IMG/VR virus record: IMGVR_UViG_3300047499_000113
Coordinates: 62,001 to 126,000 of that record
Reading direction: 5' to 3' (one strand)
DNA: 64,000 nucleotides
The translations under genes and the position numbers were made by a program. This document shows, piece after piece, positions 24,830 through 52,410 of the stretch; the stretch's first letter is position 1; the number at the start of each line of letters is the position of its first letter. A model generated the notes under the pieces. That model did no database searches. It had not been told where the DNA came from and worked only from the letters and a program-made list of their open reading frames with translations.

Positions 24830-27800
24830 CTATTGGCTAACGCGGATCTGCAAGGTTGCCACTATATACTCTAGTGGGAACACCGGCACGTAGATCGCGT
24901 CGACCAGAACGATCGTCGGATCGTTCGGCGAGGTGGCCACCGAGATTCCGGAGACCGACTGCACGATCTGCTTGTCGATGAGCTGCCCGAACATACCAAC
25001 CACCTGGTTGTTGATGTTCGTCAGCGTCGCGTTGGTCAGCTTGTTCCCGATGAAGGGATCAAGCGTGTTGCGCATCGTCTGCTGCACGTACTGGATGGTC
25101 AGCGTGACAGACGGGGTCCGCGTGATGACCGTATCCAGGCGCGTGGTCAGACCTTGGCGGATTCGCAGGCCGGACAGCACCTGCTCGATGATGGTGACGC
25201 CTGCGACGGCGACTTGGTTGGCAACCGTGGGGTCGAGCACCGTGCCGAGCGACGTGAAGCCCTGGATCTGGCGCCGCGTGAGCGGAGTCGCCACGTCGAT
25301 CGCCGGGTTGCACGTGGAGCCCGAGACGGCCGCTGCCATGAACGAACCGTCGATGAGCTGCTCGAGCGAGTTGCCGTTCGTGTCGGTCACCGTCACGACG
25401 AACGAGTCGGGGTAGACCACGATCATCAGCTCCGAGGAGAGCCCCTGAGCGATGGCCTGGACACCGAGCGCCGTCGTGCCGACTGCGACACCCACCACGC
25501 CCATGCGCTCGCCCTCTTGACGGGGGCTGCTCATGAAGACGCAGTGCTGGTTGAGGTACGTCATCACCGAGGGATCGGTCGTCAGCGGCGTGATGACGTC
25601 CGCCTTGACCTGACCCGAGATGGGCTTGCGCAGAGTGTCGATTGCCGCCGTGTAGGTGGCATCCGAAGCCTGCGACTGGCCCGGTGCACGCAGCACCTGC
25701 TCGAGTCCGACGATGACCGCGCCGTTGAGCAGCGCGAGCGAAGCCGCCAGCGACAGCGGGTTGTCCGGCGTCGGCGTTCCGAAGTTCATCTGAATCGTCT
25801 TCAGGTCTCGGAACAGTGCCGGCGCCAGATCCGTCTTGCCGTACTGATACGAGATGTAGTAGACGTCTCCGATGGACGGCTGGAAACCCTTGTGCGGGTA
25901 CGTCGACACGATGCCGGTGGTGCCCGGCGCCATGTTGATCGTGTTGTACACGAAGAGTTCGACGCCGGGGATTGCCTTGGTCGAGATGGCAGCGTCGCAC
26001 GTGAAGATGGAGTTAACCACCAGCGTGAAGCTGCCGCCGTTGTCGTAGTCGCCAGCGGAGGCCGGCAGCACCGTGAAGCGCAGACCGGTCGTCGCGTCCG
26101 TGTACGTCTGGCCGGGGAAGCCGTAGCCGTGAGAGCCGCTGCTTCCGGCCGAGGACGAGACCTGGAAGCCCGCCATCGAGTTCTCGCCGATGCCGCCGCT
26201 CATGCCCGGGACGATGCCGAGGCCAGCATCCGGGACGAATGCCGAGTTGGCGATGTTCGTGAAGGCGATGGTCGAGGCCGAGCCCACAGATCGGGAATCG
26301 ATCTCGAGGTAGTTGCCGAGACCCTGGACATTCAGGAAGTAGGCAACTGCCAGAGCACCGAATCCGGTGTTGTTGTTGAGCGCCGTGGAGATGAGGGCTG
26401 CCGTGGGCTGCGTACGGGCTGCCGAGACACCCGACGTGAAGCCGAGCGGCATGTTGCCCGTGCTCGCCTGCAGAACCGCAAGCTGCGACTGAACCGTGTT
26501 GATCCTCGAGGTGAGGACCAGCTCTCCCACGTACTGACCCACGCCCGCCGACGCCACGAGATTCGCCAGGACCGTGTTGGACGAGTCGACACCGTCATTG
26601 GTGCCGTGGACGCTGTAGAGGCCCGCCGTCTGGTTGCGGTGCAGGTTGAATGCACCGGAAGTGGTCGAGTACGCGATGGCGCTGACCAGCGGAGCGAGGG
26701 TCCCGAAGGCCGCCGTCGCATTGGCTTGCGTGATCGTGTTGACCGTGTCGTTGACGACGTGGACACCGGACGCGATGAAGTGCGCGTTGAGCGTCGTCTT
26801 CAGGGCGTTGGCGAGGTTTGCACCGGTCGTGTACGGACCGCCGACAGGATCCGAATCCACAGGCACTGCGTTGAGTGCCGTGTAGTTCGTGATGTCGTTG
26901 ATCTCGTGGTGGACCGCGACACCGCCGTTGTTGTAGTGGGCCAGAACCTCGGTGCGGATCTGGTTGAGCAGCGTCGAAACCGTCGTGTCGTCCACCACCG
27001 ATCCGCCGCCGGCGTAGGGGCCACCAGCCGCAGAGGCGTAGTTGACGGTGAAGGTTCCGGACCCGCCAGTCGTGATGAGCCACGCCTGGTTGTTGATGGC
27101 CGGGTATGTCGAGCCAGTGATGTAGACGTACGAGCCCGTTGCGAAGGCGTAGGCCGACGTCGTGGTCACGGTGAAGGAGACGCCCGCCACCACCGTGATG
27201 CCGGTGATCGGACCACCCGCCTCGTTGGCGTCGGTCACGACGTTCACGTAGTCGGGGTAGCCGTGCACTCCCTGCTGCGAGAGGTGGCGGTTGTACGCCT
27301 CCTGGAGAGCGTGAGCCAGCGTGATTGCCGTCTGCAGATTGGTCGCAGTCGGCGTGGTCACGACGTTCGTCGCATCCGACAGCTGGTGGGTCTGCACCGA
27401 GATGGCGCCGCCGCTCACGTAGCCAGTCTGGTAGGCCGAGAACTGGAGCGTGAAGTGCGTGCCGTCGACGACAGTGACGAGCCAGATGTCGTTGAGCGCC
27501 TGAACTCCCACCGCGCCCGTGATCTTGATCAGAGCGTTGGTCGTCAGGCCGTGCGCCGTGTTGGTCTGGATTTCGAAGAGACCGCCACTGTTCGTGACGG
27601 CCGCGATGCCGCCGCCGACTGGGTTGTTCTCTCCGAGGTGGACGTTGTAATGGGTCGCCAGGTCGTTGACCAGGGCGATGGCGGTCGGAAGATCGACTGC
27701 CGCAGCCAGGGGCTCGTAAGCCGCCGTGACATCACCACCGCTCGTGTACGCGCCGGTGAACACCGACCCGTTGAGCGTGAAGTGGGTCGCGTCGAGCATC

Positions 27801-30649
27801 GTCACGGTCCACGACTGGTTGATCGCCGCGGTCATGCCACCCGTGCCGGTGACACCCGTGATGGCGACCACAGTGCCGGTGCCGAAGGGGCACGGCGTCG
27901 TGGTCTGCACCTCGAAGAGACCGCCATTGTTCGTGACGGTCGTGACCGCGAGCGCAGTCGGGCCGTCCGCGTACAGGTGGTAACCCGTCGGGTATACCGA
28001 CCCAACGTGCGCGTTGTACTGCGTGCGGATGTTGTTGACGACCGTGATGAGGCTGGCCGTCATCGCCGCCACGTCAGTCGGAGACGCGACCGAGAGGAAC
28101 GCGTCGTTGATGGCCGTGACCACGTCGTTCAGAGGAACGGCGGGGCCGGACGGCAGAGTGACGCCGAACTGCTGGCCGTCGACCGACAGCTGGAGGCTGT
28201 CGTTGACGCCTTGCGAGATGTTGTAGGGCGCGATGGCCGTACCGACGAGCTGGGCCGGCTGGTTCAAAGCGTTGTACGAGCCCACCGAGGTGTTGTTGCT
28301 CTGCAGGCCGACCTTCGGAGCGCCGTTGGACTGTCCCGCGCCGACCGGCGTGATGACAGTGGCGTTCGAGATGAGGCCGGAGAGCGCCGAGCTGTTGACG
28401 TTGCGGCCCTTGATCTGCAGGATCGCCTCGGTGCCGCCCGCGAATGAGGTGGCCGACACGAGGTTGTTCGGTGCCGTGCTGAAGAAGGTGCCGGTTCCGT
28501 CCTTGTGAGTCTGGACGTCAGCATCGATCGCCGTGTTGAGCGCGGACACCACGCCGGCCATCGTCGTGATCCCGACCATGGGGACCGCAGCGATGTTGAT
28601 GCCGTCGATGTTGAGCGCGATGTAGTCGGTCGATGCGAAGACCAACGCGTTGGGGTTGGCGACGGGCTGACCGAGGAGCAGAGCCGGGAAGGCAGTGCCC
28701 AGGTTGACCGTGACCGGCGCGTTGCCGTCGATGACCACCCCGCCGAAGTTCTGGCTGAAGGTGTACAGGTCGTACGGCTCGGGATTGGCGTTGGTGAACG
28801 AGGCGCCGTACGCGGGGTCCAGCGAGTCGAGGAACTGGACGGTCACCGTCTCCGGGACCGGGCTTCCTGCGCCCGTGAGGAACGCATCCGGGTTGTTCTG
28901 CACGCCGCTCGGCCACTGGACCTGCTTGGACAGACCCGAGACCGTGCCGAACGTCACGTTGAAGAGGTTGCCGCCGGTTGCCGCCGACGACACGGTGTAC
29001 TGGCCCACTCCGCTCGGACCCACGGTCTGCACCGAGAAGGTGAAGACGTCCTCGCCGATGCGGTTGTACCAGAAGGTCGCGAACGCCTGGTAGTCGGCCG
29101 GGACCGGATTGGCCAGGGTCACGATGTTGGTCGAAGAATCGACCGCGTTGACCTGAACCGGAGGATGCGCCTGCGCGTCACGCCAGCTCTTGCCGACGTA
29201 GACGATGACGAGATCCGGACGGTTGGTCGGAAGGTCGATGCGGCCGTTGGTGATCGTCTGGTAGAGCGACTGACCCAGCGGCGTGTCGCGGCCGTTGCCA
29301 GTCGTCGGCGACAGCGGCATCACGAACTTGGTAGTGCTGACCTGGTTGGTCGTCGGGTCGGTGTAGCGGGCGAGCGGAGCCGCGAAGATGCGGTTGTCGA
29401 CCAGAAGGCCCGTGATGACCGTCGAGTCGAAGTTCGCCGTGCCCGTCGTGTTGCCAGCCGCCACCGTGAAGGCGGTGCCCCACTGGATGGTGGACTGCTC
29501 GCCGTTGTTGACGATGACGAAGTCCGGGCCGTTCACGAAGTCGGTGCGGCCGGGGCCAATACCGCAGTTGGTGACCGACAGGACGTTGCTGTTGGGCAGG
29601 TAGTCGAACGTGTCCTGCCACGTGTTGAAGTAGTACGTGATGGCGACGATCGACCCAGGCTTCGGGGCGAAGGGCAGCGTCACGGTCTGGTGCTGTCCGT
29701 CGACAGCTGCGGCGAGAACCTGCTGGTTGTTGACCAGCACGGTGACCTTCGAGGGGTCGGTGGTCGTGATGCCGCCGCCCGAACCATCGACGATCGGTCC
29801 GTTGTAGACGCGGAACGCATTGTTGCGGCCCGTGGTTTGTCCCGGGTTGAAGCCGAGGGCGCCGTTGGCGTTGCCCGAGCCCACCAGGATGTTGCCCTGC
29901 GACACCAGCTGAACGTGGTTCAGGCCCTGGTTGTCGACGTGCACCGACGCCGTGAGGTCCGTGACGTTTGCCGCGTTGATGTCGTTGGCGATGTCCGAGG
30001 CGGCGCGCGTGGCGCCGGCCGTCAGCTTGATGGCGACGGTGTTCGTGTCATCGACCGTCAGTTGCAGCGTGTCGTTGACGCCGAGGATGATGTTGTAGGT
30101 CTCGGCCTTGGGCGCCACGAGGATGCCCGGAGTCGGCGTGACTTGCGGCGAGACGTTGTCGGTGATCCGAGTGTCGCCACGGTGGAAGTAGTAGTTGACC
30201 GCGACGATGTCAGTCGGCTGCGGCGGGATGAGCAGCTGGATGATGCCGTTCTGTCCGTCGACGGCCGAAACCACTGCTTGGCTGCCGTTGACCGTGACCG
30301 ACACCTTCGTGGTGTCGTAGGTGACCTTGCCCACGCCCGATCCATCGACGATCGGGTAGTTGCGCACCTTGAACTTCGTGATCGTCCCGTTGGCGTTGCC
30401 GAGCACGGGCTGCGCGTTCGTTCCGCTGACCACGAAACGGCCAGTGGGATCCTCGCCGTACACCGGCGTGTCAGCGACGCTGCTGGAGCCGCGAATCAGC
30501 TCGAAGTTCGTCTGCGTCAGGCTCTCCTGCGCGACTCCGATCAGAACTGGGACCCGCAACCCGCCGAGGATCTGGTTCAGCACCGGCTCGGCCAGCGTTT
30601 GCACGTAAACGCCGGGGGGCGCGTAGGTCGAGAAAGGTCCGATGCCCAT
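24830..30649 (-). CDS. Contractile tail sheath protein with large repeat insertions
   Basis: N-terminal YAPPGVYVQT; C-terminal sheath core (GVTIIEQ...LRIRQGLTT...FIGNKLTN...YVPVFPLEYIVAT); 1939 aa; GGGAG RBS. Confidence 0.92.
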   Translation of the reverse strand: MGIGPFSTYAPPGVYVQTLAEPVLNQILGGLRVPVLIGVAQESLTQTNFELIRGSSSVADTPVYGEDPTGRFVVSGTNAQPVLGNANGTITKFKVRNYPIVDGSGVGKVTYDTTKVSVTVNGSQAVVSAVDGQNGIIQLLIPPQPTDIVAVNYYFHRGDTRITDNVSPQVTPTPGILVAPKAETYNIILGVNDTLQLTVDDTNTVAIKLTAGATRAASDIANDINAANVTDLTASVHVDNQGLNHVQLVSQGNILVGSGNANGALGFNPGQTTGRNNAFRVYNGPIVDGSGGGITTTDPSKVTVLVNNQQVLAAAVDGQHQTVTLPFAPKPGSIVAITYYFNTWQDTFDYLPNSNVLSVTNCGIGPGRTDFVNGPDFVIVNNGEQSTIQWGTAFTVAAGNTTGTANFDSTVITGLLVDNRIFAAPLARYTDPTTNQVSTTKFVMPLSPTTGNGRDTPLGQSLYQTITNGRIDLPTNRPDLVIVYVGKSWRDAQAHPPVQVNAVDSSTNIVTLANPVPADYQAFATFWYNRIGEDVFTFSVQTVGPSGVGQYTVSSAATGGNLFNVTFGTVSGLSKQVQWPSGVQNNPDAFLTGAGSPVPETVTVQFLDSLDPAYGASFTNANPEPYDLYTFSQNFGGVVIDGNAPVTVNLGTAFPALLLGQPVANPNALVFASTDYIALNIDGINIAAVPMVGITTMAGVVSALNTAIDADVQTHKDGTGTFFSTAPNNLVSATSFAGGTEAILQIKGRNVNSSALSGLISNATVITPVGAGQSNGAPKVGLQSNNTSVGSYNALNQPAQLVGTAIAPYNISQGVNDSLQLSVDGQQFGVTLPSGPAVPLNDVVTAINDAFLSVASPTDVAAMTASLITVVNNIRTQYNAHVGSVYPTGYHLYADGPTALAVTTVTNNGGLFEVQTTTPCPFGTGTVVAITGVTGTGGMTAAINQSWTVTMLDATHFTLNGSVFTGAYTSGGDVTAAYEPLAAAVDLPTAIALVNDLATHYNVHLGENNPVGGGIAAVTNSGGLFEIQTNTAHGLTTNALIKITGAVGVQALNDIWLVTVVDGTHFTLQFSAYQTGYVSGGAISVQTHQLSDATNVVTTPTATNLQTAITLAHALQEAYNRHLSQQGVHGYPDYVNVVTDANEAGGPITGITVVAGVSFTVTTTSAYAFATGSYVYITGSTYPAINNQAWLITTGGSGTFTVNYASAAGGPYAGGGSVVDDTTVSTLLNQIRTEVLAHYNNGGVAVHHEINDITNYTALNAVPVDSDPVGGPYTTGANLANALKTTLNAHFIASGVHVVNDTVNTITQANATAAFGTLAPLVSAIAYSTTSGAFNLHRNQTAGLYSVHGTNDGVDSSNTVLANLVASAGVGQYVGELVLTSRINTVQSQLAVLQASTGNMPLGFTSGVSAARTQPTAALISTALNNNTGFGALAVAYFLNVQGLGNYLEIDSRSVGSASTIAFTNIANSAFVPDAGLGIVPGMSGGIGENSMAGFQVSSSAGSSGSHGYGFPGQTYTDATTGLRFTVLPASAGDYDNGGSFTLVVNSIFTCDAAISTKAIPGVELFVYNTINMAPGTTGIVSTYPHKGFQPSIGDVYYISYQYGKTDLAPALFRDLKTIQMNFGTPTPDNPLSLAASLALLNGAVIVGLEQVLRAPGQSQASDATYTAAIDTLRKPISGQVKADVITPLTTDPSVMTYLNQHCVFMSSPRQEGERMGVVGVAVGTTALGVQAIAQGLSSELMIVVYPDSFVVTVTDTNGNSLEQLIDGSFMAAAVSGSTCNPAIDVATPLTRRQIQGFTSLGTVLDPTVANQVAVAGVTIIEQVLSGLRIRQGLTTRLDTVITRTPSVTLTIQYVQQTMRNTLDPFIGNKLTNATLTNINNQVVGMFGQLIDKQIVQSVSGISVATSPNDPTIVLVDAIYVPVFPLEYIVATLQIRVSQ

Positions 30650-30794: not shown

Positions 30795-31244
30795 TCAGTC
30801 GCCAGCTTTACGCTTTTCGACCAAGTAGCGGGCGACTCCCATCTCACGGACCTTGAGACTCTCACCATCCGCAGGCCGGAAGGTGTTCTTGTCTTTGCCA
30901 GGCTCCTTCGCGATGGCAGCGGCGCCAGTCTCGCGCCGCACCTTGTCACGTTCCGCCTGTTCTCCGTTGATTCGGTTCCAGCGCTTGGCTGCACTCCGGC
31001 CAACAGCTTTATCTAGGGAGGGGTAGTCGAGATCATGCACGCCCGACTGGCCGTGCACTCCACTCTCTCCTCTCACACCACCCTTGAAGCTAAAGTTGGT
31101 GAGAGAGACTCCAGCCCGCGGTGCCAATTGGCCACATCCGGGACATGGATGGGCATTCTCGTACTGCTTGATATCGTCCTGGTTGACGAGGGTCTCCTCG
31201 AACTCCGCGTTGCAGGGCTCGCAGCGATACTCAAAAATCGGCAC
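30795..31244 (-). CDS. FmdB-family zinc-ribbon protein
   Basis: MPIFEYRCEPCNAEFE...HPCPGCG...SFKGG. Confidence 0.8.
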   Translation of the reverse strand: MPIFEYRCEPCNAEFEETLVNQDDIKQYENAHPCPGCGQLAPRAGVSLTNFSFKGGVRGESGVHGQSGVHDLDYPSLDKAVGRSAAKRWNRINGEQAERDKVRRETGAAAIAKEPGKDKNTFRPADGESLKVREMGVARYLVEKRKAGD

Positions 31245-31247
31245 AGT

Positions 31248-32097
31248 TCACAATACCTTATGAGAGTCTCGTCGCTGTTTGTTGCGTGCGTCAACGCAAA
31301 GCTTGCACTCAATTCTCGGAGCGTCTAAATGAGTCCTGCCAACATAGCACTCATTGAGTGGAATTAAGCCATGTTTCTTACAAATCTTTTGAGTGGATGT
31401 GTAACTTATTTTCTTCGCACGAAATTCGGGGTCTTTCCATTTATCAAGCAGCGCTGATGAGATGTTAGCCGTCACTTTGGTGCGGTAGTTAGCATCGTTC
31501 CAGTTTTTCCTGCTCGATTCCGAAAGTAATGTTTGCATGTCAGGATGCAACATTTTTTCTATAATTTTCGGCAAAGCTTTCGCAATCGCTATGGGACTCA
31601 GGGGCTTTCCAAGCCTTGATCGAGCAATCGCTGCACAATGTTCTGGACTAAGTTTCACACCCTTGTGTGACGCAGACACTTTGGCTCGCCAAGCAGGATC
31701 TCGAGCGCGCTTCCTGGAAGCGGAAGTACATTTATCACGAAAATCGGGATCATCCCACGGGTTCTTCGTTGGGTGTGGAACATGAAGACCCCCACGCATG
31801 ATGTTGAATCCAATCTCTGGATTCCGAGTGTTAAAAAAATTCGATCCAACATTCTTCTGCTAGATTCGCAACTTCGATATTTTGACAAGTCTCTAGGACT
31901 TCGTGGGAGAAGGCGTCCGGTCCATATTTGCGAATAGCATTCGGAAAGTGCCAACGTCCGCCCTTACTTCTCAGGGCAGTCGAGACATGGTCTTTCCATC
32001 GCTTCTCCATTGTCCGAGAAGTGATACCAATGTAACGACGACCAGAGTCAGTATGTGTATGACAGTAAATTGTCCAGACGGATTTTGATGATGCCAT
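31248..32097 (-). pseudogene. GIY-YIG/NUMOD3 homing endonuclease split by a +1 frameshift in a T7 run
   Basis: 5' ORF 31831..32097 (IYCHTHTDSGRRYIGIT...RWKDH...AIRKYG...EECWIEFF-stop). Removing one T of the T7 run at 31833-31839 gives FFNTRNPEIGFNIMRGG, in frame with 31248..31799 (NUMOD3-like KVSASHKGVKLSPEH plus a C-terminal Cys/His finger). Confidence 0.85.
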
Positions 32098-33353
32098 TGA
32101 ATAACACTACCAATTAGTAGCGTTATAAACGGACTCAAAACACGCTCGTAGGTCAGCTTCTTGCCAATCTTGACCGGCACCCCATTGATCCCAAGCTCGG
32201 TGGCCAACTGGAGCAAATCGTAGGAGGCTGCGCCCGAGAGGAAACCAAGGGTGTTGGCCTGCGATTCGGACGTGAGGTCCGTGCGGTTGATGACGATCGG
32301 CAACGGGACCCAGGTCTCCCAGTCCACGCGCAGCGAAAGGGTGACCGCGCTCTCGTAGTAGTAGTCGTCGATCTCGGCGTTGTAGACCTCTTCACTCTCG
32401 CCGCCGGGAGTGATGTCGAGAAGCTCAAGTCCCTCGAACCCGAGGACGTTCTGCCGCTCGAGGAACTTCTCGACCACGTAGTCACTCATGCGCTCTCTGT
32501 CGGTCGCATCACGAGCGAACACGATGAGGCTGAAAGTGACCTCGAACTTGCCACCGTAAACTTCGGCCACCTCGCCGCGAGTTCCGGTGACGACGATGGC
32601 CATTTGGTCGCCCTTCTGCACGCGGTCTCCGAACGCCAGAACAGCGCCGGGGATAGACTGAATATCCGTCCAATCGCGGTAGAAGTCGTAGGGACCCTGC
32701 TGAGGCAGCTGGTACCTGTAGTTGGCGAAAATGGAATCGCCGGCGGGAGTCGGCTGCAGGAACGTAACGACGGTGGTGTTATCCTCGGCCTCGTAGTTGA
32801 CCGAGTAGTCGACCCCAGGAACGAGGACGCGTCTGTTGTTGAGCGACAGACGCAGCGAGCCCGGATACACGTTCTCGTGAGAAAGCTGAGCGTATTGATC
32901 CGCCGAGTTCGTGAAGTAGATGAGCGGCTCGTTTAGGACCGTGATGATCGGGTCTACGATGAACTTTCCCGGCTTCTGGCGAGCGTCGTCTGGAAGCTCC
33001 TGCACCGTGACGATGTAGACGCCAGGCGGAGTCGGGAAGACACTTCTGTCCGGGTTGACTTCCTCGAGAATGGTGAAATTCTCGCGGGTCCACTCGAGTG
33101 AAGTGCCCGGGAAGTTCTTGACTGGCGCGAGCATCACGAATGACGACAGACGGCCGACGTAGTTGTCCGCGCTCAGGCGAACACGGTCAGCCGTCGTGTT
33201 ATCAACGATAATGCCGCGCTGGGGCCGCTGCTCAAACGAGAACTTGTTCTGGACGTTCTCGGAGTCCTCTCGATACCTCGGGTGATCGTAGAGGATCTGC
33301 TTGAGTTCGTGGATGACCCGCTCTTTCGTGGCGTTGGTGAGCCAATTCTTCAC
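31971..33353 (-). CDS. Probable tail terminator / tail completion protein
   Basis: 460 aa between neck genes and sheath; C-terminal FEVTFSLIVFARDATDRERMSDYV...YYESAVTLSLRVDWE resembles terminator-type folds. The last ~55 aa overlap the endonuclease and look non-homologous. Confidence 0.55.
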   Translation of the reverse strand: MKNWLTNATKERVIHELKQILYDHPRYREDSENVQNKFSFEQRPQRGIIVDNTTADRVRLSADNYVGRLSSFVMLAPVKNFPGTSLEWTRENFTILEEVNPDRSVFPTPPGVYIVTVQELPDDARQKPGKFIVDPIITVLNEPLIYFTNSADQYAQLSHENVYPGSLRLSLNNRRVLVPGVDYSVNYEAEDNTTVVTFLQPTPAGDSIFANYRYQLPQQGPYDFYRDWTDIQSIPGAVLAFGDRVQKGDQMAIVVTGTRGEVAEVYGGKFEVTFSLIVFARDATDRERMSDYVVEKFLERQNVLGFEGLELLDITPGGESEEVYNAEIDDYYYESAVTLSLRVDWETWVPLPIVINRTDLTSESQANTLGFLSGAASYDLLQLATELGINGVPVKIGKKLTYERVLSPFITLLIGSVIQWHHQNPSGQFTVIHILTLVVVTLVSLLGQWRSDGKTMSRLP

Positions 33354-33377
33354 AGCGGGCCTCCACCCGAGCCCAGG

Positions 33378-33629
33378 TCAGACTCCTTTGAACGGATCCG
33401 GTTCCGTTGCAGGCTCGGGAGCCGGGAGAGTCGTGCGCTCGGAATCGTCGACTTCGACCTTTGCCTTCTTCGCTTTGGACTTCGGCGTAGCGGCCGGGGT
33501 GGGAGGGGGAGGAGGTGCAGCGCCCTTGTCCGCCTTCTGGGCCTTGTGCAGGTCCGGATAGCAGAATTCGATGACGTCGGCTTCGGTCAACAACGTCCGC
33601 GGGAACATCGCGCCTTTGATGTGTGCCAT
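33378..33629 (-). CDS. Small hypothetical protein, Pro/Lys-rich
   Basis: 83 aa, AGGAGAG RBS. Confidence 0.65.
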   Translation of the reverse strand: MAHIKGAMFPRTLLTEADVIEFCYPDLHKAQKADKGAAPPPPPTPAATPKSKAKKAKVEVDDSERTTLPAPEPATEPDPFKGV

Positions 33630-33653
33630 GCGCTCTCCTATGCCATAAAGGTC

Positions 33654-34661
33654 TCAGTCGTCCATCTGAGACAGCATCAGGAGACCAGTCGCGACGGCCG
33701 TCATCGGGTCGATCGCGCCACGCACCTCCGAGATCTGGATGGGGAACTTGGCGCGATGAAGCTCGAAGCGCTCCTTGAACTTGTCGAGGAAGCCGCCGGC
33801 GAGCGAGGTCCCGCCCGACACGATGATGGGGATGGGCTTCGGGACGAGAAGCTCGTTCTTGGCCTTCGCGAAGCGCTTGCTGAACTCGTCGATGGTGTAA
33901 TCGATGAGTGTCTGGACGAAGAGCGCGATGGCCTCTTCCTCGCGCGTCTTGGGCTTGGTGATGTCGATGCCGCCTTCCTTGACGGCGCACATCTTGGCCG
34001 CCGTCGAGTTGACAGCTTTGGCCGCACCACCATCGATCCAGTCACCACCCTTGCCGAGAGAAAACTCGAGGGCGCTCATGGCGTTGTACGCCAGACACAC
34101 GTTTGTCATGCCCGAGCCATACGAGATGCCGAGTCCGGAGAAGCTCTCCTTCGTGCAATCCGCATAGATGATGGCGAGCGCTTCGTTGACGGGCTCTGCC
34201 TGATACCCGAGTTCGCCCAGGATCTTGCCGAGGATTGCCCGGTGGTAGGTCACGTCCGACCCCACGACGTCGACCGCCGGCGCCGGGATGGAGTAGCAGC
34301 ACTTCTCCTTGGGCATGCGAGGCTCGCCCAAGATCTGCTTCATCATCAGACCGATGACCTGCTGCGCGTCGATTTCGCCCGAGGCGATCACGCCCTGGGA
34401 CATGGGACGACGAGCCTCCCTGTTGAACAGGTTGGCCGTCTCGAGGGCTTTGTCACCGATGACTAGGAGCTTGCCGTCGACCTCCACGTAGTCGGTGTTG
34501 GAGATCTTGAGCATCCGCTTGGTGTCGAGCGGAAGGTCCAAGAAGGCGTCGCGGACCCGGGAGTGCACGATCTTCTTGGCACTGCGCCGCGCGGCCACGA
34601 AATTCATCGTGCCGCAGTCGAGTCCTACCCCCGCGTCTTCAGGCTTCTTGGTGTCGGTCAT
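33654..34661 (-). CDS. Actin-family ATPase (volactin/MamK-like group)
   Basis: Phosphate-1 GLDCGTMN, connect-1 EPVNEALA, phosphate-2 GISYGSGMTNVC, adenosine VSGGTS, connect-2 DPMTAVATG; start taken as ATG 34661. Confidence 0.9.
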   Translation of the reverse strand: MTDTKKPEDAGVGLDCGTMNFVAARRSAKKIVHSRVRDAFLDLPLDTKRMLKISNTDYVEVDGKLLVIGDKALETANLFNREARRPMSQGVIASGEIDAQQVIGLMMKQILGEPRMPKEKCCYSIPAPAVDVVGSDVTYHRAILGKILGELGYQAEPVNEALAIIYADCTKESFSGLGISYGSGMTNVCLAYNAMSALEFSLGKGGDWIDGGAAKAVNSTAAKMCAVKEGGIDITKPKTREEEAIALFVQTLIDYTIDEFSKRFAKAKNELLVPKPIPIIVSGGTSLAGGFLDKFKERFELHRAKFPIQISEVRGAIDPMTAVATGLLMLSQMDD

Positions 34662-34694
34662 GGGTCTGCGTCTCCGTATCCAGGACAATACAGC

Positions 34695-35048
34695 TCAGTA
34701 CCACCTGGGCAGTATATCTTTGGATTCCGGAACAGGAGCAGAATCCTGTCGTTCACGCAAGTCGTCGAAGGTAGCCAGGAGCTGCTCGAGGACGACTATC
34801 TCCGCGCGCAGCCGCTTGTTCACGAACTCGTCGAAGTGAGCCAGTGCCTCCGGGTGGTTCAGAAGGTCGACACCACCGCGGCCGGAGTATAGGTCACCCT
34901 TCGCATACTGCTCGAGACGGCCCAGGGCGGTCAGCACCAGGGCCGCCACCCGCTGAGCAAGAGCGTCCCCACTATCCACCAGGTCCTGCCTGCCGCACTC
35001 CAGCAGGAAGTCCCTTGCTTCGTTGGACCAGAAGGATTGGCGGGGCAT
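34695..35048 (-). CDS. Hypothetical protein
   Basis: 117 aa, TAATG-coupled to the upstream gene. Confidence 0.65.
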   Translation of the reverse strand: MPRQSFWSNEARDFLLECGRQDLVDSGDALAQRVAALVLTALGRLEQYAKGDLYSGRGGVDLLNHPEALAHFDEFVNKRLRAEIVVLEQLLATFDDLRERQDSAPVPESKDILPRWY

Positions 35049-35596
35049 TACTTCTTGCGCGCTTTCTTGAGGGCCTCGAGTCCGGCGTCGAAGTCTTCCG
35101 TGTCAGCTTCCGAGGTTTGGACGTTGAGTTTGACCTCGGCGGATTCTGGCACTATCTGCTTCGGTATGAACATCGGCTCATCAGAAGGCTTGCTGACTGC
35201 CTGCGCGGCTTGACCGGGAAGAGCAGAGGCCGTCTGATAGATGACTTGCGGGGTAGGCGCCCGTTGAAGAGCGGCAGCCATACTATCGAGTTTCGCCATG
35301 ATGCTTTGGAGCATGGCGGATTCCACGGGCGGCGCCGGCGGAGGAATTGTGGGGTGCGAGGGAGCAGCCGAGAAAGGCCACACTGGGATGGGCGGTTTCG
35401 GCGGAACTGGGGCGGGAGCGCGCTGCTCTATGGTTATCCACTTCTTGCGTTCGTACTCTCGAACCTGGCGCGACGACATGAAGGTCTGCTCGGGCAAGAG
35501 CTTCGAGCTGGATGCACCGCCAGCACCATCGAGCCGCACACCAATGTCCTCGATGGTCAGGCTCGAAGGCAATCGGTTCGTCACCAAGTACATCAT
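35048..35596 (-). CDS. Hypothetical protein (structural region), Pro-rich linker
   Basis: 182 aa, in-operon overlaps at both ends. Confidence 0.7.
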   Translation of the reverse strand: MMYLVTNRLPSSLTIEDIGVRLDGAGGASSSKLLPEQTFMSSRQVREYERKKWITIEQRAPAPVPPKPPIPVWPFSAAPSHPTIPPPAPPVESAMLQSIMAKLDSMAAALQRAPTPQVIYQTASALPGQAAQAVSKPSDEPMFIPKQIVPESAEVKLNVQTSEADTEDFDAGLEALKKARKK

Positions 35597-36291
35597 GTGG
35601 ATATGTAGTTCTTGAGAATCTTCTCTATCTGCGGTGCGAACTTCTCCAACACTACTTGCCGCAGCTCATCCATGAACCTCTTCATGATGCCCTGGAACTT
35701 GCCCTGCGGAAAGTGGATGTCGCCCGATTTGGCCACCCGAGTCTGGCGTTCGAAAGTGACCGAGAGCCGACCCTCTCGGTTGATGTTCATGTCGCGCGGC
35801 GCGCTCATGGCGAGCCTATGGTTCATCTTGCGCTCTTCAGGACCTTTGAACGCGTTGCGCGGTCCATATTTGCTACTGTTGGGACCCCACTGGCGCAAGT
35901 TGGACCGGGTCCGATTGGGCCTGTTGAGCGCACTTGGAACAGGCCGCCTCTTATCCTTCATCCGCGCGACGCGGTTGAAGCCTCCGCGGGCGATAACCTG
36001 GTAGGTCCTGTCGGCCGCTTCTTCGTACGCTTCGGCGGCTCGAGCTGCCGATTCCTCGAGCTTCTTGACGTCGATGTCGACCGCCTCGAGCTGAAGAAGG
36101 ATTTCGAACACGATGCCCTCGGCGCCAACGTGCGAGAACACCTCGTAGTCCTTGAGCATCGGCTTTTGCGGGAAGCCAGCCTCGTCGAGCACTTTCTTCA
36201 GTGCCATCAGGCCGTCTTTGGCAATCTCGTCCTTGACTGCCTCAGTGGCCCTCTCGAGTTGTGCCACCAGGCTGGTCGCGATGCTGGCCAC
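35593..36291 (-). CDS. Hypothetical protein (possible neck/tail-completion protein)
   Basis: 232 aa with basic central region; position among head-tail joining genes. Confidence 0.65.
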   Translation of the reverse strand: MASIATSLVAQLERATEAVKDEIAKDGLMALKKVLDEAGFPQKPMLKDYEVFSHVGAEGIVFEILLQLEAVDIDVKKLEESAARAAEAYEEAADRTYQVIARGGFNRVARMKDKRRPVPSALNRPNRTRSNLRQWGPNSSKYGPRNAFKGPEERKMNHRLAMSAPRDMNINREGRLSVTFERQTRVAKSGDIHFPQGKFQGIMKRFMDELRQVVLEKFAPQIEKILKNYIST

Positions 36292-36293
36292 GA

Positions 36294-37625
36294 TTACCTA
36301 CGGTTCGTGTTCTCTGCAGTCGGCGAGTTACCGCGATACTGACGCTCGGCCGGAATGGTCTCGCGGTCAGTGAGCATCGGGAATGCTTTACCCTTGCCCG
36401 GAACGATGTACCGAGTCTGCGGTGCGACGAGGAGTTCCGTCTGAATGACGGGAACTTTGTACCGAATATCGGCTGTGTCGAGGTGCGACGTCGTGAAGAA
36501 CTGCTGGAGCTGCATGCCACGAATGCTCGGCATGCGCACCGGGCCGATTCCGTACCTGTCGCCGTTGAGCTTCACGAAGAAATCGCGCTGGGTCAGCAGC
36601 GGGCTCGGACCAGTCCACGTGTCGTACGGGTGCTGGACCGTGCGACCTCGATTGCCCTGCGAAATGGAGCGTTCCCCATCTTCCGGAGCGATGAGGATGT
36701 CGTACGGACCGTCGTATCCTCCGATGATGCTCGTGCCGTAGCACGTGAGGCAGGAAGCGTCGGGCTGCTTGCGAGAATAGTCGTAGCAGCCGCACTTCGG
36801 GCCGACCAGCTTCATCTTGAAGAGTTTGACCGGCTCGCCACCGTTGCCCAGCATCCAGCGGTTACGGCGGATGGCTTCACGCCAAATCCAGTCCAGGCTC
36901 TCTATCTGACGATTGTTGGCCTCGGCCGCGCGGTCCAGCGAGGTCTCGATGAGCGCGCCGGTGTTCCTGTCGACGGCGACCGTCGTGATCCGGTAATAAG
37001 TCTTCTGGTCCAGCTCCGAGGGGACCTCACGCTCGAGGTAGTAGCGGTACGTCGCCAGGACGAGGTCAGTCGGATTCTGAGGCAGGACGGGCGGAGACTG
37101 CACCTGCGAAGCCACGTCGAAGGTCACGGTCCGGCGAAGCTCGACCTCTCCCATCTTGGCGTTGATGCTCTCGACGAACGCCGGGATGCCGTTGACTGTG
37201 ACGTAGACGTTGAGGTTCGTACAATTCGGGCTGTGAGCCGACGTCGTGTCGAGGATTATCGGCTTGTTCTCCGTTTGGAAGATCCAGCGGCCATCCGGGT
37301 CCGTGTCACCGCGCGCGATGAAGCGCTGGGTGACATTCTCGTTCATGGCGACCCGGATGAGGAGTCGGTCGCGATAGAAGTCCCCGCCAATGGGCAAGGC
37401 ATTGAGCCGGACGTAGGGCCCATACTCGGAGTCGAAGCTCCGGTAGACGTTGACGCCCACGATGTCGAACTGCGTGTTGGCTGGAATCTCTGTCGGACTC
37501 GTCCACCTCAAGTCCGTGACATGCAGTTCGAACCCGCTTGAACACATGATGTTCAGCGGTGGCAGAGGCAGCGCCGGATACTGAAGCTCGAGCGTGCCTA
37601 TTGGGCGATCGGGCGGGAAGGGCAT
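36294..37625 (-). CDS. Head closure / neck (stopper-like) protein with Cys cluster
   Basis: GGEPVKLF...GPKCGC...QPDASCLTCYGTSIIGGY resembles the CxC...CxxCxG motif of Herelleviridae-type neck proteins; N-terminal beta-rich domain. Confidence 0.65.
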   Translation of the reverse strand: MPFPPDRPIGTLELQYPALPLPPLNIMCSSGFELHVTDLRWTSPTEIPANTQFDIVGVNVYRSFDSEYGPYVRLNALPIGGDFYRDRLLIRVAMNENVTQRFIARGDTDPDGRWIFQTENKPIILDTTSAHSPNCTNLNVYVTVNGIPAFVESINAKMGEVELRRTVTFDVASQVQSPPVLPQNPTDLVLATYRYYLEREVPSELDQKTYYRITTVAVDRNTGALIETSLDRAAEANNRQIESLDWIWREAIRRNRWMLGNGGEPVKLFKMKLVGPKCGCYDYSRKQPDASCLTCYGTSIIGGYDGPYDILIAPEDGERSISQGNRGRTVQHPYDTWTGPSPLLTQRDFFVKLNGDRYGIGPVRMPSIRGMQLQQFFTTSHLDTADIRYKVPVIQTELLVAPQTRYIVPGKGKAFPMLTDRETIPAERQYRGNSPTAENTNRR

Positions 37626-37646
37626 GTCCCTTCCTTCGATACCCGA

Positions 37647-38012
37647 TTAGGAGGTTGGCGACTCGCCAGCCGGGGGCGCAGGAGCAGCTTGCGGGACGGG
37701 CGGCGGAGGGGCTCCGTTCGCCGGCGGAGCCATCGGGTTGGGCACGCAGACGATGTCCACCAGGCCCTCCTTGGTCTCCTTGTTCATGCTAATGCGGATG
37801 TCCTGGATGGTGTTCTCGTCGACACCCGCTTCCTTGTACGCCTTGCTCAGGAGCTGATTGCGGGCCGTTGTGATGGCCTCGAACTGTGCCATGGCTTGCT
37901 TGTGCTGCATTTCCAGGTTGCAAGCCTGGATGGCCCAATGCTGGGCGGACGACTCGAGCTTGGCGAGACTCTGAAGCTCTTCGGCCGAGAGCTTCGCTTG
38001 GCGGTGGATCAT
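37647..38012 (-). CDS. Hypothetical coiled-coil protein with Pro-rich tail
   Basis: Probable start ATG 38012 (MIHRQAKLSAEEL). Confidence 0.6.
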   Translation of the reverse strand: MIHRQAKLSAEELQSLAKLESSAQHWAIQACNLEMQHKQAMAQFEAITTARNQLLSKAYKEAGVDENTIQDIRISMNKETKEGLVDIVCVPNPMAPPANGAPPPPVPQAAPAPPAGESPTS

Positions 38013-38031
38013 GCCGCACAGTACCGAGCGA

Positions 38032-38343
38032 CTATTCTTCCTGTTCGCCCTGCTCGTCTTCGCCGAAGTCACCCTGGTCGTTGATGGCTACCTCGAGCTT
38101 CAGAGGCTTGACAAGCACGCGGCCCGGTTCCAAGCGCAGTTCCCGGGATACCACCTTGATGGCCGCCTCGAGCGCGCTCATGACCTCGGACTCGAGCTTT
38201 TTGACCAGAACATCCTTGGCGACCTGTCCCTCGAACTCTGCGCTGAAGGCTATCTCCGTCCGGACGCTGTACTCGGTCGCCGGGTGCTCCAGGCTCTCGT
38301 GGGTAGAGGCCGCAACGCGAGCAGCGATGGACTCGAGTCTCAT
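38032..38343 (-). CDS. Hypothetical protein with N-terminal SIAARVAA motif
   Basis: Probable start ATG 38343 (MRLESIAARVAAST); the longer track ORF is an upstream extension through the divergent gene. Confidence 0.65.
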   Translation of the reverse strand: MRLESIAARVAASTHESLEHPATEYSVRTEIAFSAEFEGQVAKDVLVKKLESEVMSALEAAIKVVSRELRLEPGRVLVKPLKLEVAINDQGDFGEDEQGEQEE

Positions 38344-40649: not shown

Positions 40650-41294
40650 ATGACGATGACCGCGCAGCTGCCCTGGAAGTTTCCGTTCAAGCCAGTGCGG
40701 GCGCCATGGTCAGTCTTCCAGACGTTGACACTCTCCAACTACTTCATGGAGAAGAAGTTCGACGGCTGGCGAGCCATCGTGCAGGTCGGCGCGAACAACA
40801 TCGTGACGCTCTGGACCCGCGAGAAGCGGCTGATCACGATGCCGGACAACTTGAACAAGCAGCTCGCATTGCTCCAGATGCCGGAAGGCACTCTTCTGGA
40901 CGGCGAGATTTGGAACATGTCCAAGCGCGGCGCCTGGAAGCACAATCGCTCGGCCGTGTGCGCCCTGACGCTTTGGGACGCCATCCGGGTCGACACGCGA
41001 GACTTCTCAGGCGAGCCCATCGAGAAGCGGCGGGAGGCCCTGGAGAAGCTGCTCGAGGGCAAGGACACGCCCGACATCAAGGCGACGGAGCTTCTGGCGG
41101 CCGACGAGACTATCGCGCGTCAGATCGACGCGGAAGCCCGGTCATTTCGCGAGGGCTCGCAGGCTCGATCCGGTTTCATTCACGGCGTGGTTTTGAAGCG
41201 GCGTGGGTCGCCGCGACGAGACAACGCCGTTCGGTGTGTCGAGCACGCCGATTGGATCAAGATTGTCTTCGACGGCATGCAGAGCGGCCTCTGA
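40650..41294 (+). CDS. ATP-dependent ligase-like nucleotidyltransferase domain, no OB-fold
   Basis: Motif I EKKFDGWR, III LLDGEI, IIIa LTLWDAI, RREALEKL, IV variant IHGVVLK, V WIKI. The start could be upstream at ATG 40485. Confidence 0.8.
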   Translation: MTMTAQLPWKFPFKPVRAPWSVFQTLTLSNYFMEKKFDGWRAIVQVGANNIVTLWTREKRLITMPDNLNKQLALLQMPEGTLLDGEIWNMSKRGAWKHNRSAVCALTLWDAIRVDTRDFSGEPIEKRREALEKLLEGKDTPDIKATELLAADETIARQIDAEARSFREGSQARSGFIHGVVLKRRGSPRRDNAVRCVEHADWIKIVFDGMQSGL

Positions 41295-42608: not shown

Positions 42609-42627
42609 CTGCCACCTGTCTGCAACG

Positions 42628-44184: not shown

Positions 44185-44221
44185 CCCGAAAAAGCCTGAT
44201 TAGAACTCTGTATAGTCCTCC

Positions 44222-44923: not shown

Positions 44924-45062
44924 TCGGATTACCGCATTCCTCACAGCATCCTTCGAGACCGTCGTCGTCTTCGTCGTCTTGAGACACGATCTCGACCAGA
45001 ACCGGATTGCATCGATCCGCTGACGGTCCGTCGATCGGTCGCAGGCATACTGTCTTGTTCAT
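44904..45062 (-). CDS. Small Cys-rich acidic protein (52 aa, below the ORF-track cutoff)
   Basis: ATGA-coupled to the GT stop: MNKTVCLRPIDGPSADRCNPVLVEIVSQDDEDDDGLEGCCEECGNPITRGPR. Confidence 0.45.
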   Translation of the reverse strand: MNKTVCLRPIDGPSADRCNPVLVEIVSQDDEDDDGLEGCCEECGNPITRGPR

Positions 45063-52347: not shown

Positions 52348-52410
52348 GCGGTCTTGGTCTCTGTATGCGTGTGGACCGGCGAACCTGCCGGTCAATCACA
52401 CGTTACCGAG

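What the first reader, a model, noticed from the sequence alone, without database searches (positions are those of the whole stretch)
33654..34661. Phage-encoded actin homologue resembling archaeal volactin, inside the head-neck-tail operon
Seen: all five actin-fold motifs, with a distinctive phosphate-2 GISYGSGMTNVC (Ser where MreB/ParM have Asp). From memory, this and GLDxGTMN, ANxFNxExRRPMxxG, EPxNExxAxIY and GGDWID match the haloarchaeal volactin-type family much better than MreB, ParM or FtsA. Established: jumbo phages use tubulin PhuZ, and the Corynebacterium prophage CGP3 uses the actin AlpC. Inference: a filament for capsid/DNA trafficking or assembly-site positioning, expressed with late genes. 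A likely bacterial host (GH73 muramidase) with an archaeal-type actin would be evolutionarily notable.
Basis: partly seen in the sequence, partly recalled or inferred. Interest (0 to 1): 0.82.

Follow-up and report, generated by a model that had tools for sequence, protein, structure and literature searches.

The report
Huge-phage actin with partner adaptor
A huge bacteriophage from a moss metagenome carries an intact actin-like gene of the volactin family inside its neck-and-tail gene block, next to a small partner gene with a tail motif also found beside cellular volactin genes, which points to an unstudied actin-based system that is common in huge phages.

Summary
A 335-aa ORF on the minus strand (33654-34661) matches Pfam Volactin PF25216 at 248 bits (cut-off 35). 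MreB models score only 15-16 bits. The AlphaFold model (pLDDT 96) is closest to the filament formers MamK, MreB and BeeR.

The "archaeal-type" reading does not hold. The family is found in at least 537 bacterial and archaeal species genomes, mostly Planctomycetota among the best hits, and on at least 555 IMG/VR viral contigs, many of 200-485 kb. In a careful tree the window protein falls in a strongly supported phage clade, apart from both the haloarchaeal and the bacterial clades.

The position is conserved: neck protein (443 aa), small genes, volactin, neck protein (about 403 aa), Zn-ribbon, giant sheath.

New here: the gene just upstream of volactin genes ends in a shared short motif (about A-L-[KR]-x-L-[KR]-K-K/G-G) in phages and Planctomycetota, and haloarchaeal partners carry it internally. 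In the window this is ORF 35048-35596.

Best reading: a polymerising actin plus an adaptor, used late in infection to position or assemble virion parts. Polymerisation, binding and timing are inferred, not shown.

The parts
33654..34661 (-). Volactin-family actin-like ATPase gene, 335 aa, intact, single copy in the window
   Evidence: ORF. Pfam PF25216 at 247.9 bits. AlphaFold2 pLDDT 96.4, pTM 0.93. Foldseek PDB top hits are MamK 5ljv, MreB and BeeR 8r2n. It is the only hit of the family profile among window ORFs.
34095..34130 (-). Phosphate-2 motif GISYGSGMTNVC (residues 178-189), with the family-wide Ser180 and Asn187 in place of the usual acidic residues
   Evidence: Coordinates. Family conservation. 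Alignment to MreB D-I-G-G-G-T-T-E. Relatives carry inteins at six or more different points in and just after this motif.
35048..35596 (-). Candidate volactin adaptor, 182 aa: conserved N-terminal domain of about 60 aa, proline-rich linker, 'FIPxxIVP' box and a basic C-terminal tail
   Evidence: Homologues in 38 of 85 viral loci by phmmer, always co-directional and upstream of volactin. No Pfam family. Only 16 database homologues, all unnamed or generically named.
35051..35095 (-). C-terminal tail motif DFDAGLEALKKARKK of the adaptor, proposed as the volactin-binding peptide
   Evidence: The motif L[KRE]x[LMAI][RK][KGRQ] in the last 22 residues occurs in a co-directional ORF ending within 1.6 kb upstream of volactin in 53 of 77 viral loci and 51 of 72 loci L013-L088 (nearly all Planctomycetota MAGs). 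Background is 45 of 12,098 ORFs. Group consensus. A related internal motif occurs in haloarchaeal DUF7139 partners.
34695..35048 (-). 117-aa ORF between adaptor and volactin; poorly conserved (8 of 85 loci), function unknown
   Evidence: no Pfam family.
33378..33629 (-). 83-aa proline/lysine-rich ORF just downstream of volactin. A small ORF of 96-103 aa holds this place in related phages, but the sequence is poorly conserved.
32136..33353 (-). Neck protein (tail-terminator/gateway-like), about 403 aa in relatives. In the window the ORF runs on to 31971.
   Evidence: Present in 74 of 80 loci with enough downstream DNA. AlphaFold2 pLDDT 83.9. Foldseek: neck of phage 812 (8qkh_G, E 2.7e-7), then E217, Sf14, Pam3 and Pa193 necks. 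Atlas leads to terminator and sheath-stabiliser families.
36294..37625 (-). 443-aa virion neck/head-completion-like protein (a lead only)
   Evidence: Present in 59 of 66 loci with enough upstream DNA. All close Atlas clusters are viral. The structure of its best Atlas hit (not shown to be a relative) matches T4 neck and head-completion families. phrog_2806 E 3.7e-5.
30795..31244 (-). Zn-ribbon protein, 149 aa, conserved between the neck protein and the sheath
   Evidence: Pfam Zn_ribbon_8 at 31.5 bits, below the cut-off of 34.4. Present in 62 of 75 loci.
24830..30649 (-). Giant tail sheath protein, 1,939 aa
   Evidence: phrog_2839 tail sheath E 1.8e-25. Pfam Phage_sheath_1C at 23.1 bits, below the cut-off of 26.9. 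Present in 68 of 75 loci.

Best explanation
The gene encodes a phage-specific member of the volactin family of actin-like ATPases. It most likely binds ATP and polymerises into filaments, as its haloarchaeal relative does in vivo.

It probably works as a two-part system with the protein encoded at 35048-35596. That protein's basic C-terminal tail (…GLEALKKARKK) is proposed to dock on the filament, while its N-terminal domain binds a cargo or anchor.

Both genes are packed co-directionally between neck genes and just upstream of the sheath gene in a large clade of huge phages. The system is therefore most likely made late in infection and used to position, move or bring together large virion parts (filled heads, tails) or the assembly site. 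This would be an actin-based counterpart of the PhuZ tubulin system.

Shown here: family membership, fold, conserved nucleotide-binding motifs, the phage clade, the synteny, and the shared partner motif.
Inferred: polymerisation, tail-filament binding, late expression, and the cargo.
For: - Family and fold: Pfam Volactin at 248 bits, full length. pLDDT 96 model closest to MamK, MreB and BeeR filaments. The family profile hits MamK at E 1e-14 and BeeR at 3e-10.
- Nucleotide-binding residues are invariant or nearly so across 84 diverse members: D15, G17, T18, E160, G182, G184, D207, D210, G283, G284.
- A family member forms dynamic filaments in vivo in Haloferax volcanii (PMC10869688).
- Relatives carry inteins at six or more separate sites in and next to the phosphate-2 loop, as is typical of functionally critical sites.
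- The protein lies in a phage clade with 100/98 support. At least 555 IMG/VR contigs carry a relative, and 20 of the best 80 are 200 kb or longer.
- Synteny: neck protein present in 74 of 80 loci, sheath in 68 of 75, 443-aa protein in 59 of 66, all on the same strand. The downstream gene is a neck protein by fold.
- In the window, gaps between genes run from -4 to +33 nt.
- The partner motif is found upstream in about 70% of loci against a background of 0.37%. It is shared with Planctomycetota, other bacteria and small membrane-anchored partners on phage-like contigs, and haloarchaeal DUF7139 partners carry it internally.
Against: - No expression or protein data: no RNA run was listed.
- Timing is inferred from gene position only. 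The promoter and terminator scans were no better than chance.
- Tail-filament binding could not be tested, because no complex prediction was available.
- The adaptor's N-terminal domain has no recognisable fold or family, so the cargo is unknown.
- In this window a 117-aa ORF separates adaptor and actin, unlike the median gap of 47 nt in relatives.
- About 30% of loci lack a regex match to the motif.
- The family replaces two acidic phosphate-2 residues with Ser and Asn, so its ATPase chemistry may differ from MreB and ParM.
Confidence: 0.55

Rival explanations
1. It is a DNA-positioning or segregation system like ParMRC or AlpAC. The filament moves or anchors replicating phage genomes, or maintains the huge genome as a plasmid-like episome. 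The upstream adaptor would act like ParR or AlpA and bind phage DNA.
For: It has the two-gene actin-plus-adaptor layout, with a short C-terminal tail as the likely docking element. From established knowledge, the plasmid ParM/ParR system and the CGP3 prophage AlpC/AlpA system work this way (PMC4446434).
Against: The cassette sits inside the neck/tail block, not among replication genes. No iterated centromere-like repeats were found within 33000-38200. The adaptor has no detectable DNA-binding family. Partners elsewhere are membrane proteins or coiled coils, not DNA binders.
Confidence: 0.18
2. It takes over host cell shape, size or division. The phage filament remodels or enlarges the host cell, or blocks division, to make room for very large virions. 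This would echo volactin's role in the rod-to-disk shape change of Haloferax.
For: The characterised family member affects cell shape, and its filaments attach to the membrane by their tips (PMC10869688). Some phage-like contigs have a small membrane-anchored partner with the same tail motif (L181).
Against: The window's adaptor has no transmembrane segment. A host-takeover gene would be expected among early genes, not fixed between neck genes in most relatives.
Confidence: 0.12
3. It is a non-polymerising ASKHA ATPase, for example a chaperone-like factor (Hsp70 or EutJ type) that helps fold or assemble the giant structural proteins.
For: EutJ and viral Hsp70 homologues appear lower in the structure lists. 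The phosphate-2 motif is unusual.
Against: The top structural and profile hits are all filament formers: MamK, MreB, BeeR, actin. The protein has no Hsp70 substrate-binding domain. A member of the same Pfam family polymerises in vivo.
Confidence: 0.05
4. It is a recent capture of an archaeal volactin gene by a phage of bacteria, or the phage infects archaea.
For: The family name and Pfam model are centred on haloarchaea, which score 436-466 bits against 248 for the window protein. One relative at 55% identity sits in a Thermoplasmata MAG, on a 9-kb contig.
Against: Identity to haloarchaeal members is only 36%, lower than the 39-43% to Planctomycetota. The phage clade is separate with 100/98 support. 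A haloarchaeal query found no relative in IMG/VR. The short MAG contigs carrying close relatives are assigned to four unrelated phyla, which looks like mis-binning. Shine-Dalgarno-like sequences lie upstream of several genes, and a glucosaminidase-like domain scores below cut-off; both fit a bacterial host only weakly.
Confidence: 0.04

Closest known systems
Volactin (VolA, HVO_2015) of Haloferax volcanii; Pfam PF25216
   Same: Same Pfam family with a full-length match. Same Ser/Asn phosphate-2 signature and GGDWID motif. Also preceded by a partner gene that carries the L-[KR]-x-L-[KR]-G-G motif.
   Different: Only 36% identical to the haloarchaeal members fetched here (Natrinema, Haloarcula, Halogeometricum; HVO_2015 itself was not obtained), and in a different clade. 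The haloarchaeal partner is a DUF7139 membrane protein, while the phage partner is soluble. The archaeal gene is a chromosomal cell-shape gene, while this one is fixed in a phage neck/tail block.
Volactin-family proteins of Planctomycetota and other bacteria (uncharacterised)
   Same: 39-43% identity. Upstream partner ends in …LKKLKGG.
   Different: They lie on chromosomal contigs of up to 1.18 Mb. The partner is a coiled-coil protein of about 280 aa. Tandem paralogue pairs occur in two other bacterial contigs, L006 and L089. They form a separate clade (90/98).
MamK, BeeR and MreB (solved bacterial actin filaments)
   Same: Closest solved folds: TM 0.64-0.71, profile E 1e-14 for MamK and 3e-10 for BeeR. 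All five actin motifs align.
   Different: 16-19% identity. MreB models score below their cut-offs. Two phosphate-2 acidic residues are replaced.
PhuZ tubulin spindle of nucleus-forming jumbo phages
   Same: A cytoskeletal polymer encoded by very large phages. From established knowledge (reviewed in PMC7950403; not read for this point), PhuZ positions the phage nucleus and delivers capsids. That is the kind of role proposed here.
   Different: A different fold (tubulin, GTPase). No evidence was gathered here on whether these phages also have PhuZ or a nucleus shell.
AlpC/AlpA of Corynebacterium prophage CGP3, and the ParM/ParR plasmid system
   Same: An actin-like ATPase of a mobile element working with a small adaptor (PMC4446434).
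   Different: No detectable sequence similarity in phage collections. Only two uncultured huge phages match in 50,697 phage records, and BFVD holds no close model. The adaptor here is upstream, lacks a DNA-binding family, and no centromere repeats were found.

Membership tests
Pfam PF25216 Volactin | Full-length match to the family HMM above the gathering score (35 bits) | tested here: met
   247.9 bits, E 2.4e-73, profile positions 3-318 of 321. For calibration, haloarchaeal members score 436-466 bits, Planctomycetota 272-276 and other phage members 228-253.
Pfam PF25216 Volactin | Actin (ASKHA) fold with phosphate-1, connect-1, phosphate-2, adenosine and connect-2 motifs, including the family's S-[FYW]-G-[AS]-G-M-x-N phosphate-2 | tested here: met
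   Motifs located and conserved in the family. The model has pLDDT 96.4 and the fold of filament-forming actins.
Pfam PF25216 Volactin | Dynamic filament formation, the property shown for the founding member | not testable with these tools
   Shown only for H. volcanii volactin (PMC10869688). It needs purified protein or imaging.
Orthologue of haloarchaeal volactin (the 'archaeal-type' claim) | Groups with the haloarchaeal clade in a phylogeny | tested here: not met
   The careful tree puts the window protein in a phage clade (100/98), apart from the haloarchaeal clade (100/100) and the bacterial clade (90/98). Identity is 36%.
MreB/Mbl | Score above the family cut-offs (Pfam PF06723 at 27 bits; NCBIfam TIGR00904 at 365.75 bits) | tested here: not met
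   16.1 bits and 15.1 bits. hhalign to E. coli MreB gives probability 95% and 21% identity, a remote homology only.
ParMRC / AlpAC-type segregation cassette | Actin-like ATPase plus a DNA-binding adaptor plus centromere-like repeats | tested here: inconclusive
   An actin and an adaptor are present. No DNA-binding family was found in the adaptor and no iterated repeats nearby. DNA binding itself was not testable.
Volactin-adaptor pair (a grouping proposed here, not an established family) | Co-directional upstream gene ending in about A-L-[KR]-x-[LMA]-[RK]-[KG]-[KG] | tested here: met
   The window ORF 35048-35596 ends in …GLEALKKARKK. Enrichment is 53 of 77 viral loci and 51 of 72 loci L013-L088 (nearly all Planctomycetota MAGs), against 0.37% background.
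Tailed huge phage (contractile tail) | Tail sheath and neck proteins, on a contig of viral size | tested here: met
   Sheath phrog_2839 E 1.8e-25. Neck protein by fold. The window is identical to part of IMGVR_UViG_3300047499_000113, 240,015 bp.

The most novel reading that the evidence does not exclude
Huge phages of this clade run an actin-based transport or assembly machine. Volactin filaments, coupled through a short basic C-terminal peptide on a modular adaptor, would carry or join giant heads and tails.

The same peptide-filament interface would be ancient and shared by archaea, bacteria and phages. Different N-terminal modules would give different anchors or cargoes: a membrane anchor in haloarchaea, a coiled coil in Planctomycetota, and a soluble cargo-binding domain in phages.

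The peptide's L-K-K core loosely recalls the LKKT/V core of eukaryotic WH2 actin-binding motifs. That resemblance is from memory and untested.
Probability: 0.25. Interest if true: 0.85.

Novelty: new variant of a known kind. Interest (0 to 1): 0.66.

Why it matters
Phage cytoskeletons are known mainly from the PhuZ tubulin of nucleus-forming jumbo phages and from one prophage actin, AlpC. This gene shows that a different polymer family is fixed in the structural gene block of a large, environmentally widespread clade of huge phages. At least 555 IMG/VR contigs carry it, some up to 485 kb.

None of the papers searched mentions it. Databases already label such proteins automatically as 'Volactin domain-containing'.

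The finding also changes how the volactin family should be viewed. It is not a haloarchaeal speciality but a broad family with phage, bacterial and archaeal branches.

The shared partner-tail motif gives a concrete, cheap experiment: test peptide binding and co-polymerisation. The result would bear on three open points at once:
- what anchors volactin filament tips to the membrane in Haloferax;
- what the uncharacterised Planctomycetota actin does;
- what the phage filament carries.

Tried and rejected
- Sequence searches of the protein against PHROGs, NCBIfam and PDB found nothing useful.
- Two attempts to scan GTDB genomes with broad alignments failed because no conserved stretch was long enough. 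A 10-sequence alignment worked.
- I tried to find haloarchaeal members by picking acidic representatives. These turned out to be halophile-like bacterial genes with bacterial neighbours such as GGDEF/EAL and LpxA. Haloarchaeal sequences finally came from the plasmid collection.
- Cluster look-ups gave no taxonomy.
- The first neighbour-clustering script timed out.
- No RNA run was listed for the gene, and the window has no tRNAs.
- Promoter and terminator scans were at chance level, and no parC-like repeats were found.
- PDB sequence searches of two neighbours were empty.
- Haloarchaeal and Planctomycetota queries found no close relatives in IMG/VR. I take this as evidence against recent exchange.
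- Literature searches for PF25216, DUF7139, 'phage-encoded actin', and actin in huge phages or megaphages found nothing on this system.
- The host could not be assigned. MAG labels of close relatives conflict (Methylobacter, Actinomycetota, Thermoplasmata, Legionellales), and Atlas labels point to Acidobacteriota.
- I did not test whether these phages also encode PhuZ or a nucleus shell protein.
Full report
**1. The observation**

The coordinates hold a real gene, but on the minus strand. The ORF runs 33654..34661 from an ATG and encodes 335 aa. An in-frame TTG at 34688 would add nine residues. The plus strand of the same span is interrupted by a stop. A GGAG lies about 9 nt upstream of the ATG, and the closest homologues are also 335 aa, so the ATG is the likely start.

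Pfam's Volactin model PF25216 matches end to end at 247.9 bits, E 2.4e-73, against a cut-off of 35. MreB models reach only 16.1 bits (Pfam) and 15.1 bits (NCBIfam). PHROGs and a PDB sequence search gave nothing.

**2. What the protein is**

An AlphaFold2 model built on 84 diverse relatives is very confident: pLDDT 96.4, pTM 0.93.

- Foldseek against the PDB ranks the MamK filament (5ljv), C. crescentus and T. maritima MreB, and the BeeR filament (8r2n) first, with TM 0.64-0.71 at 16-19% identity. Actin, crenactin and ParM follow. EutJ appears only at rank 25.
- A family profile hits MamK at E 1e-14 and BeeR at 3e-10.
- hhalign to E. coli MreB aligns the connect-1, phosphate-2, adenosine and connect-2 motifs, residues 63-327; phosphate-1 lies outside the aligned span.
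- D15, G17, T18, E160, G182, G184, D207, D210, G283 and G284 are invariant or nearly so in the family.
- The family replaces the two acidic residues of the canonical phosphate-2 motif with Ser180 and Asn187. This is true of the haloarchaeal members too.
- Relatives carry inteins at six or more distinct points in and just after this loop, with Cys+1 and His-Asn junctions. The Atlas lists a viral cluster with LAGLIDADG and intein-splicing domains. Inteins typically sit in sites under the strongest constraint.

The founding member, Haloferax volcanii volactin, forms dynamic filaments in vivo that touch the membrane by their tips (PMC10869688).

**3. Where the family lives**

The family is not archaeal-specific.

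- The large protein collection holds more than 2,070 homologues. There are 1,053 clusters at 50% identity with E up to 0.001.
- A scan of one genome per prokaryotic species found at least 537 genomes with a relative. The best 80 are almost all Planctomycetota, including Brocadiaceae/Kuenenia and Phycisphaerales, at 39-43% identity on contigs of up to 1.18 Mb.
- Acidic representatives that I first took for haloarchaeal lie in clearly bacterial neighbourhoods: GGDEF/EAL and GatCAB; LpxA, an ECF sigma factor and MscL. Two of these three contigs carry tandem paralogues.
- Haloarchaeal members from Natrinema, Haloarcula and Halogeometricum came from the plasmid collection at 35.5-37% identity.
- Pfam scores calibrate the picture: haloarchaea 436-466 bits, Planctomycetota 272-276, phage members 228-253.

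**4. The phage branch**

The window is identical to part of IMGVR_UViG_3300047499_000113, which is 240,015 bp. It occurs in moss metagenomes.

- IMG/VR holds at least 555 contigs with a relative. Of the best 80, all at 50% identity or more, 20 are 200-485 kb.
- Among 50,697 deposited phage genomes, only two unannotated metagenomic 'uncultured phage' genomes match: LR745208.1 (485 kb, 52%) and LR756511.1 (595 kb, 31%). The huge-phage survey of Al-Shayeb et al. mentions tubulin but not actin; I did not confirm that these two records come from it.
- BFVD has no close viral model.

A careful maximum-likelihood tree of 51 sequences, with E. coli MreB and FtsA as outgroup, gives three groups:
- a phage super-clade (100/98) holding the window's clade (100/100), the LR745208 clade and others;
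- a cellular bacterial clade (90/98);
- a weakly joined group (92/38) with the haloarchaea (100/100), LR756511 and short contigs, at least one with a phage baseplate domain.

The quick 102-sequence tree agrees. Haloarchaeal and Planctomycetota queries find no close relatives in IMG/VR. The window protein therefore belongs to an old, phage-specific branch and is not a captured archaeal gene.

Evidence on the host is weak: Shine-Dalgarno-like sequences upstream of several genes and a glucosaminidase-like domain below cut-off, both weakly consistent with a bacterial host. MAG labels of close relatives conflict, which suggests mis-binning.

**5. Context**

On the minus strand, reading in the direction of transcription:

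| Coordinates | Product |
|---|---|
| 36294-37625 | 443-aa protein |
| 35593-36291 | 232-aa protein |
| 35048-35596 | 182-aa protein (candidate adaptor) |
| 34695-35048 | 117-aa protein |
| 33654-34661 | volactin |
| 33378-33629 | 83-aa protein |
| 32136-33353 | protein of about 403 aa |
| 31248-32097 | GIY-YIG homing-endonuclease insert |
| 30795-31244 | Zn-ribbon protein |
| 24830-30649 | 1,939-aa sheath |

Gaps between the genes from 37625 to 33353 run from -4 to +33 nt.

Across 85 viral loci, all on the same strand:
- the 403-aa gene is present in 74 of 80 with enough flank;
- the sheath in 68 of 75;
- the Zn-ribbon in 62 of 75;
- the 443-aa gene in 59 of 66.

The same order is seen on 292-kb and 436-kb contigs. 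The 403-aa protein folds (pLDDT 83.9) like neck components of phages 812, E217, Sf14, Pam3 and Pa193. The 443-aa protein has only leads to T4 neck and head-completion folds. 'Head-neck-tail operon' is therefore a fair description, although promoter and terminator scans were uninformative.

**6. A partner with a shared tail**

While comparing neighbourhoods I found that volactin genes of every kind are preceded by a co-directional gene whose product carries the same short basic motif.

- In the window, the 182-aa product ends …DFDAGLEALKKARKK.
- Its phage homologues share an N-terminal domain of about 60 aa, a proline-rich linker, a 'FIPSxIVP' box and the tail D-x-A-x-x-A-L-[RK]-x-L-[RK]-K-K. 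The gene typically ends about 47 nt before the actin start.
- Planctomycetota partners are coiled-coil proteins of about 280 aa ending …GGIAxNLArLKKLKGG.
- Other bacterial partners end …AKLRGMRGGKK.
- A phage-like short contig has a 101-aa single-pass membrane protein ending …SLDALKSLKRG.
- Haloarchaeal partners are DUF7139 membrane proteins with an internal …GLRGLRGGEKK.

The regular expression L[KRE]x[LMAI][RK][KGRQ] in the last 22 residues is met by an upstream ORF in 53 of 77 viral loci and 51 of 72 loci L013-L088 (nearly all Planctomycetota MAGs). Only 45 of 12,098 other ORFs meet it.

The N-terminal parts are unrelated, so this looks like a modular adaptor with one conserved docking peptide. 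[quoted passage not shown] No paper mentions DUF7139 or PF25216.

**7. Mechanism**

The best-supported reading is an ATP-dependent filament (inferred from family, fold and motifs) that is coupled through the adaptor tail (inferred from the conserved linkage and motif) to a cargo or anchor chosen by the adaptor's N-terminal domain (unknown).

Because the cassette is fixed between neck genes in huge phages with giant sheaths, the most likely use is late: positioning or bringing together very large virion parts or the assembly site.

Rivals are a ParMRC/AlpAC-like DNA-positioning system, a host shape or division takeover, and a non-polymerising ATPase.
- Against the first: the position in the structural block, no repeats and no DNA-binding family.
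- Against the second: the window's adaptor has no membrane segment.
- Against the third: the structural neighbours are all filament formers.

None of the rivals is excluded.

**8. Novelty and verdict**

The protein is a new, phage-specific branch of a known family. Phage cytoskeletal polymers are a known kind of system. An actin of this family in huge phages, with a conserved adaptor, was not found in the literature available here, although databases auto-label such proteins.

I rate it a new variant of a known kind and moderately to highly interesting. The 'archaeal actin in a bacterial phage' angle should be dropped.

Noticed in passing
L093:3971-4894, L094:3917-4825, L095:3791-4690 (haloarchaea); L014:7037-7894 and other loci in L013-L088 (nearly all Planctomycetota MAGs); L089:5925-6842; L181:708-1013: Cellular and other volactin genes are preceded by a partner gene with the same short basic motif (…L-[KR]-x-L-[KR]-G-G). 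In haloarchaea the partner is a DUF7139 membrane protein. It could be the unknown factor that anchors volactin filament tips to the membrane in Haloferax.
   Followed up: partly
window 31248-32135: A GIY-YIG homing endonuclease (ORF 31831-32097, Pfam 31.7 bits) and a second endonuclease-like ORF (31248-31799) are inserted between the neck gene and the Zn-ribbon gene. The neck ORF has lost its usual stop after …ERVL and reads on for 55 extra residues to 31971, overlapping the endonuclease ORF in another frame.
   Followed up: partly
window 24830-30649: The tail sheath protein is 1,939 aa (1,557-1,931 aa in relatives). Only the last 350 residues or so match sheath models. The rest includes stretches that hit the E1_FCCH domain model.
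   Followed up: no
window 56345-61048 and 61048-63999: Two very large collagen-triple-helix repeat proteins, 1,567 aa and at least 983 aa, with Pfam Collagen at 661 and 425 bits. They are probably fibres. An endonuclease VII gene sits at 55908-56345.
   Followed up: no
window 41142-52395: A sugar-modification cluster lies next to the structural block: UDP-glucose dehydrogenase, a B12-binding radical SAM enzyme, an FkbM methyltransferase (plus strand, 44222-44923), an NDP-sugar epimerase/dehydratase and three multi-domain glycosyltransferases. This hints at glycosylated virions or modification of the host surface.
   Followed up: no
window 40650-41294 (+): A minimal 214-aa nucleotidyltransferase with a KxDG motif, on the opposite strand inside the structural block. 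It hits ATP-dependent DNA ligase (34.8 bits) and mRNA-capping enzyme (30.7 bits). It is conserved at the same place in related phages.
   Followed up: partly
P0121, P0123, P0125, P0144, P0177, P0196 and others (relatives, not in the window): Many viral volactin genes are split by inteins at six or more different insertion points clustered in the phosphate-2 loop and before GGDWID. Other relatives carry N-terminal fusions, including an HU-like DNA-binding domain in an Atlas cluster labelled Acidobacteriota.
   Followed up: partly
L006:7939-10708 and L089:6906-10100: In some bacterial chromosomes two volactin paralogues sit in tandem, a short one and a longer one with an extension, behind the motif-bearing partner gene.
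   Followed up: no
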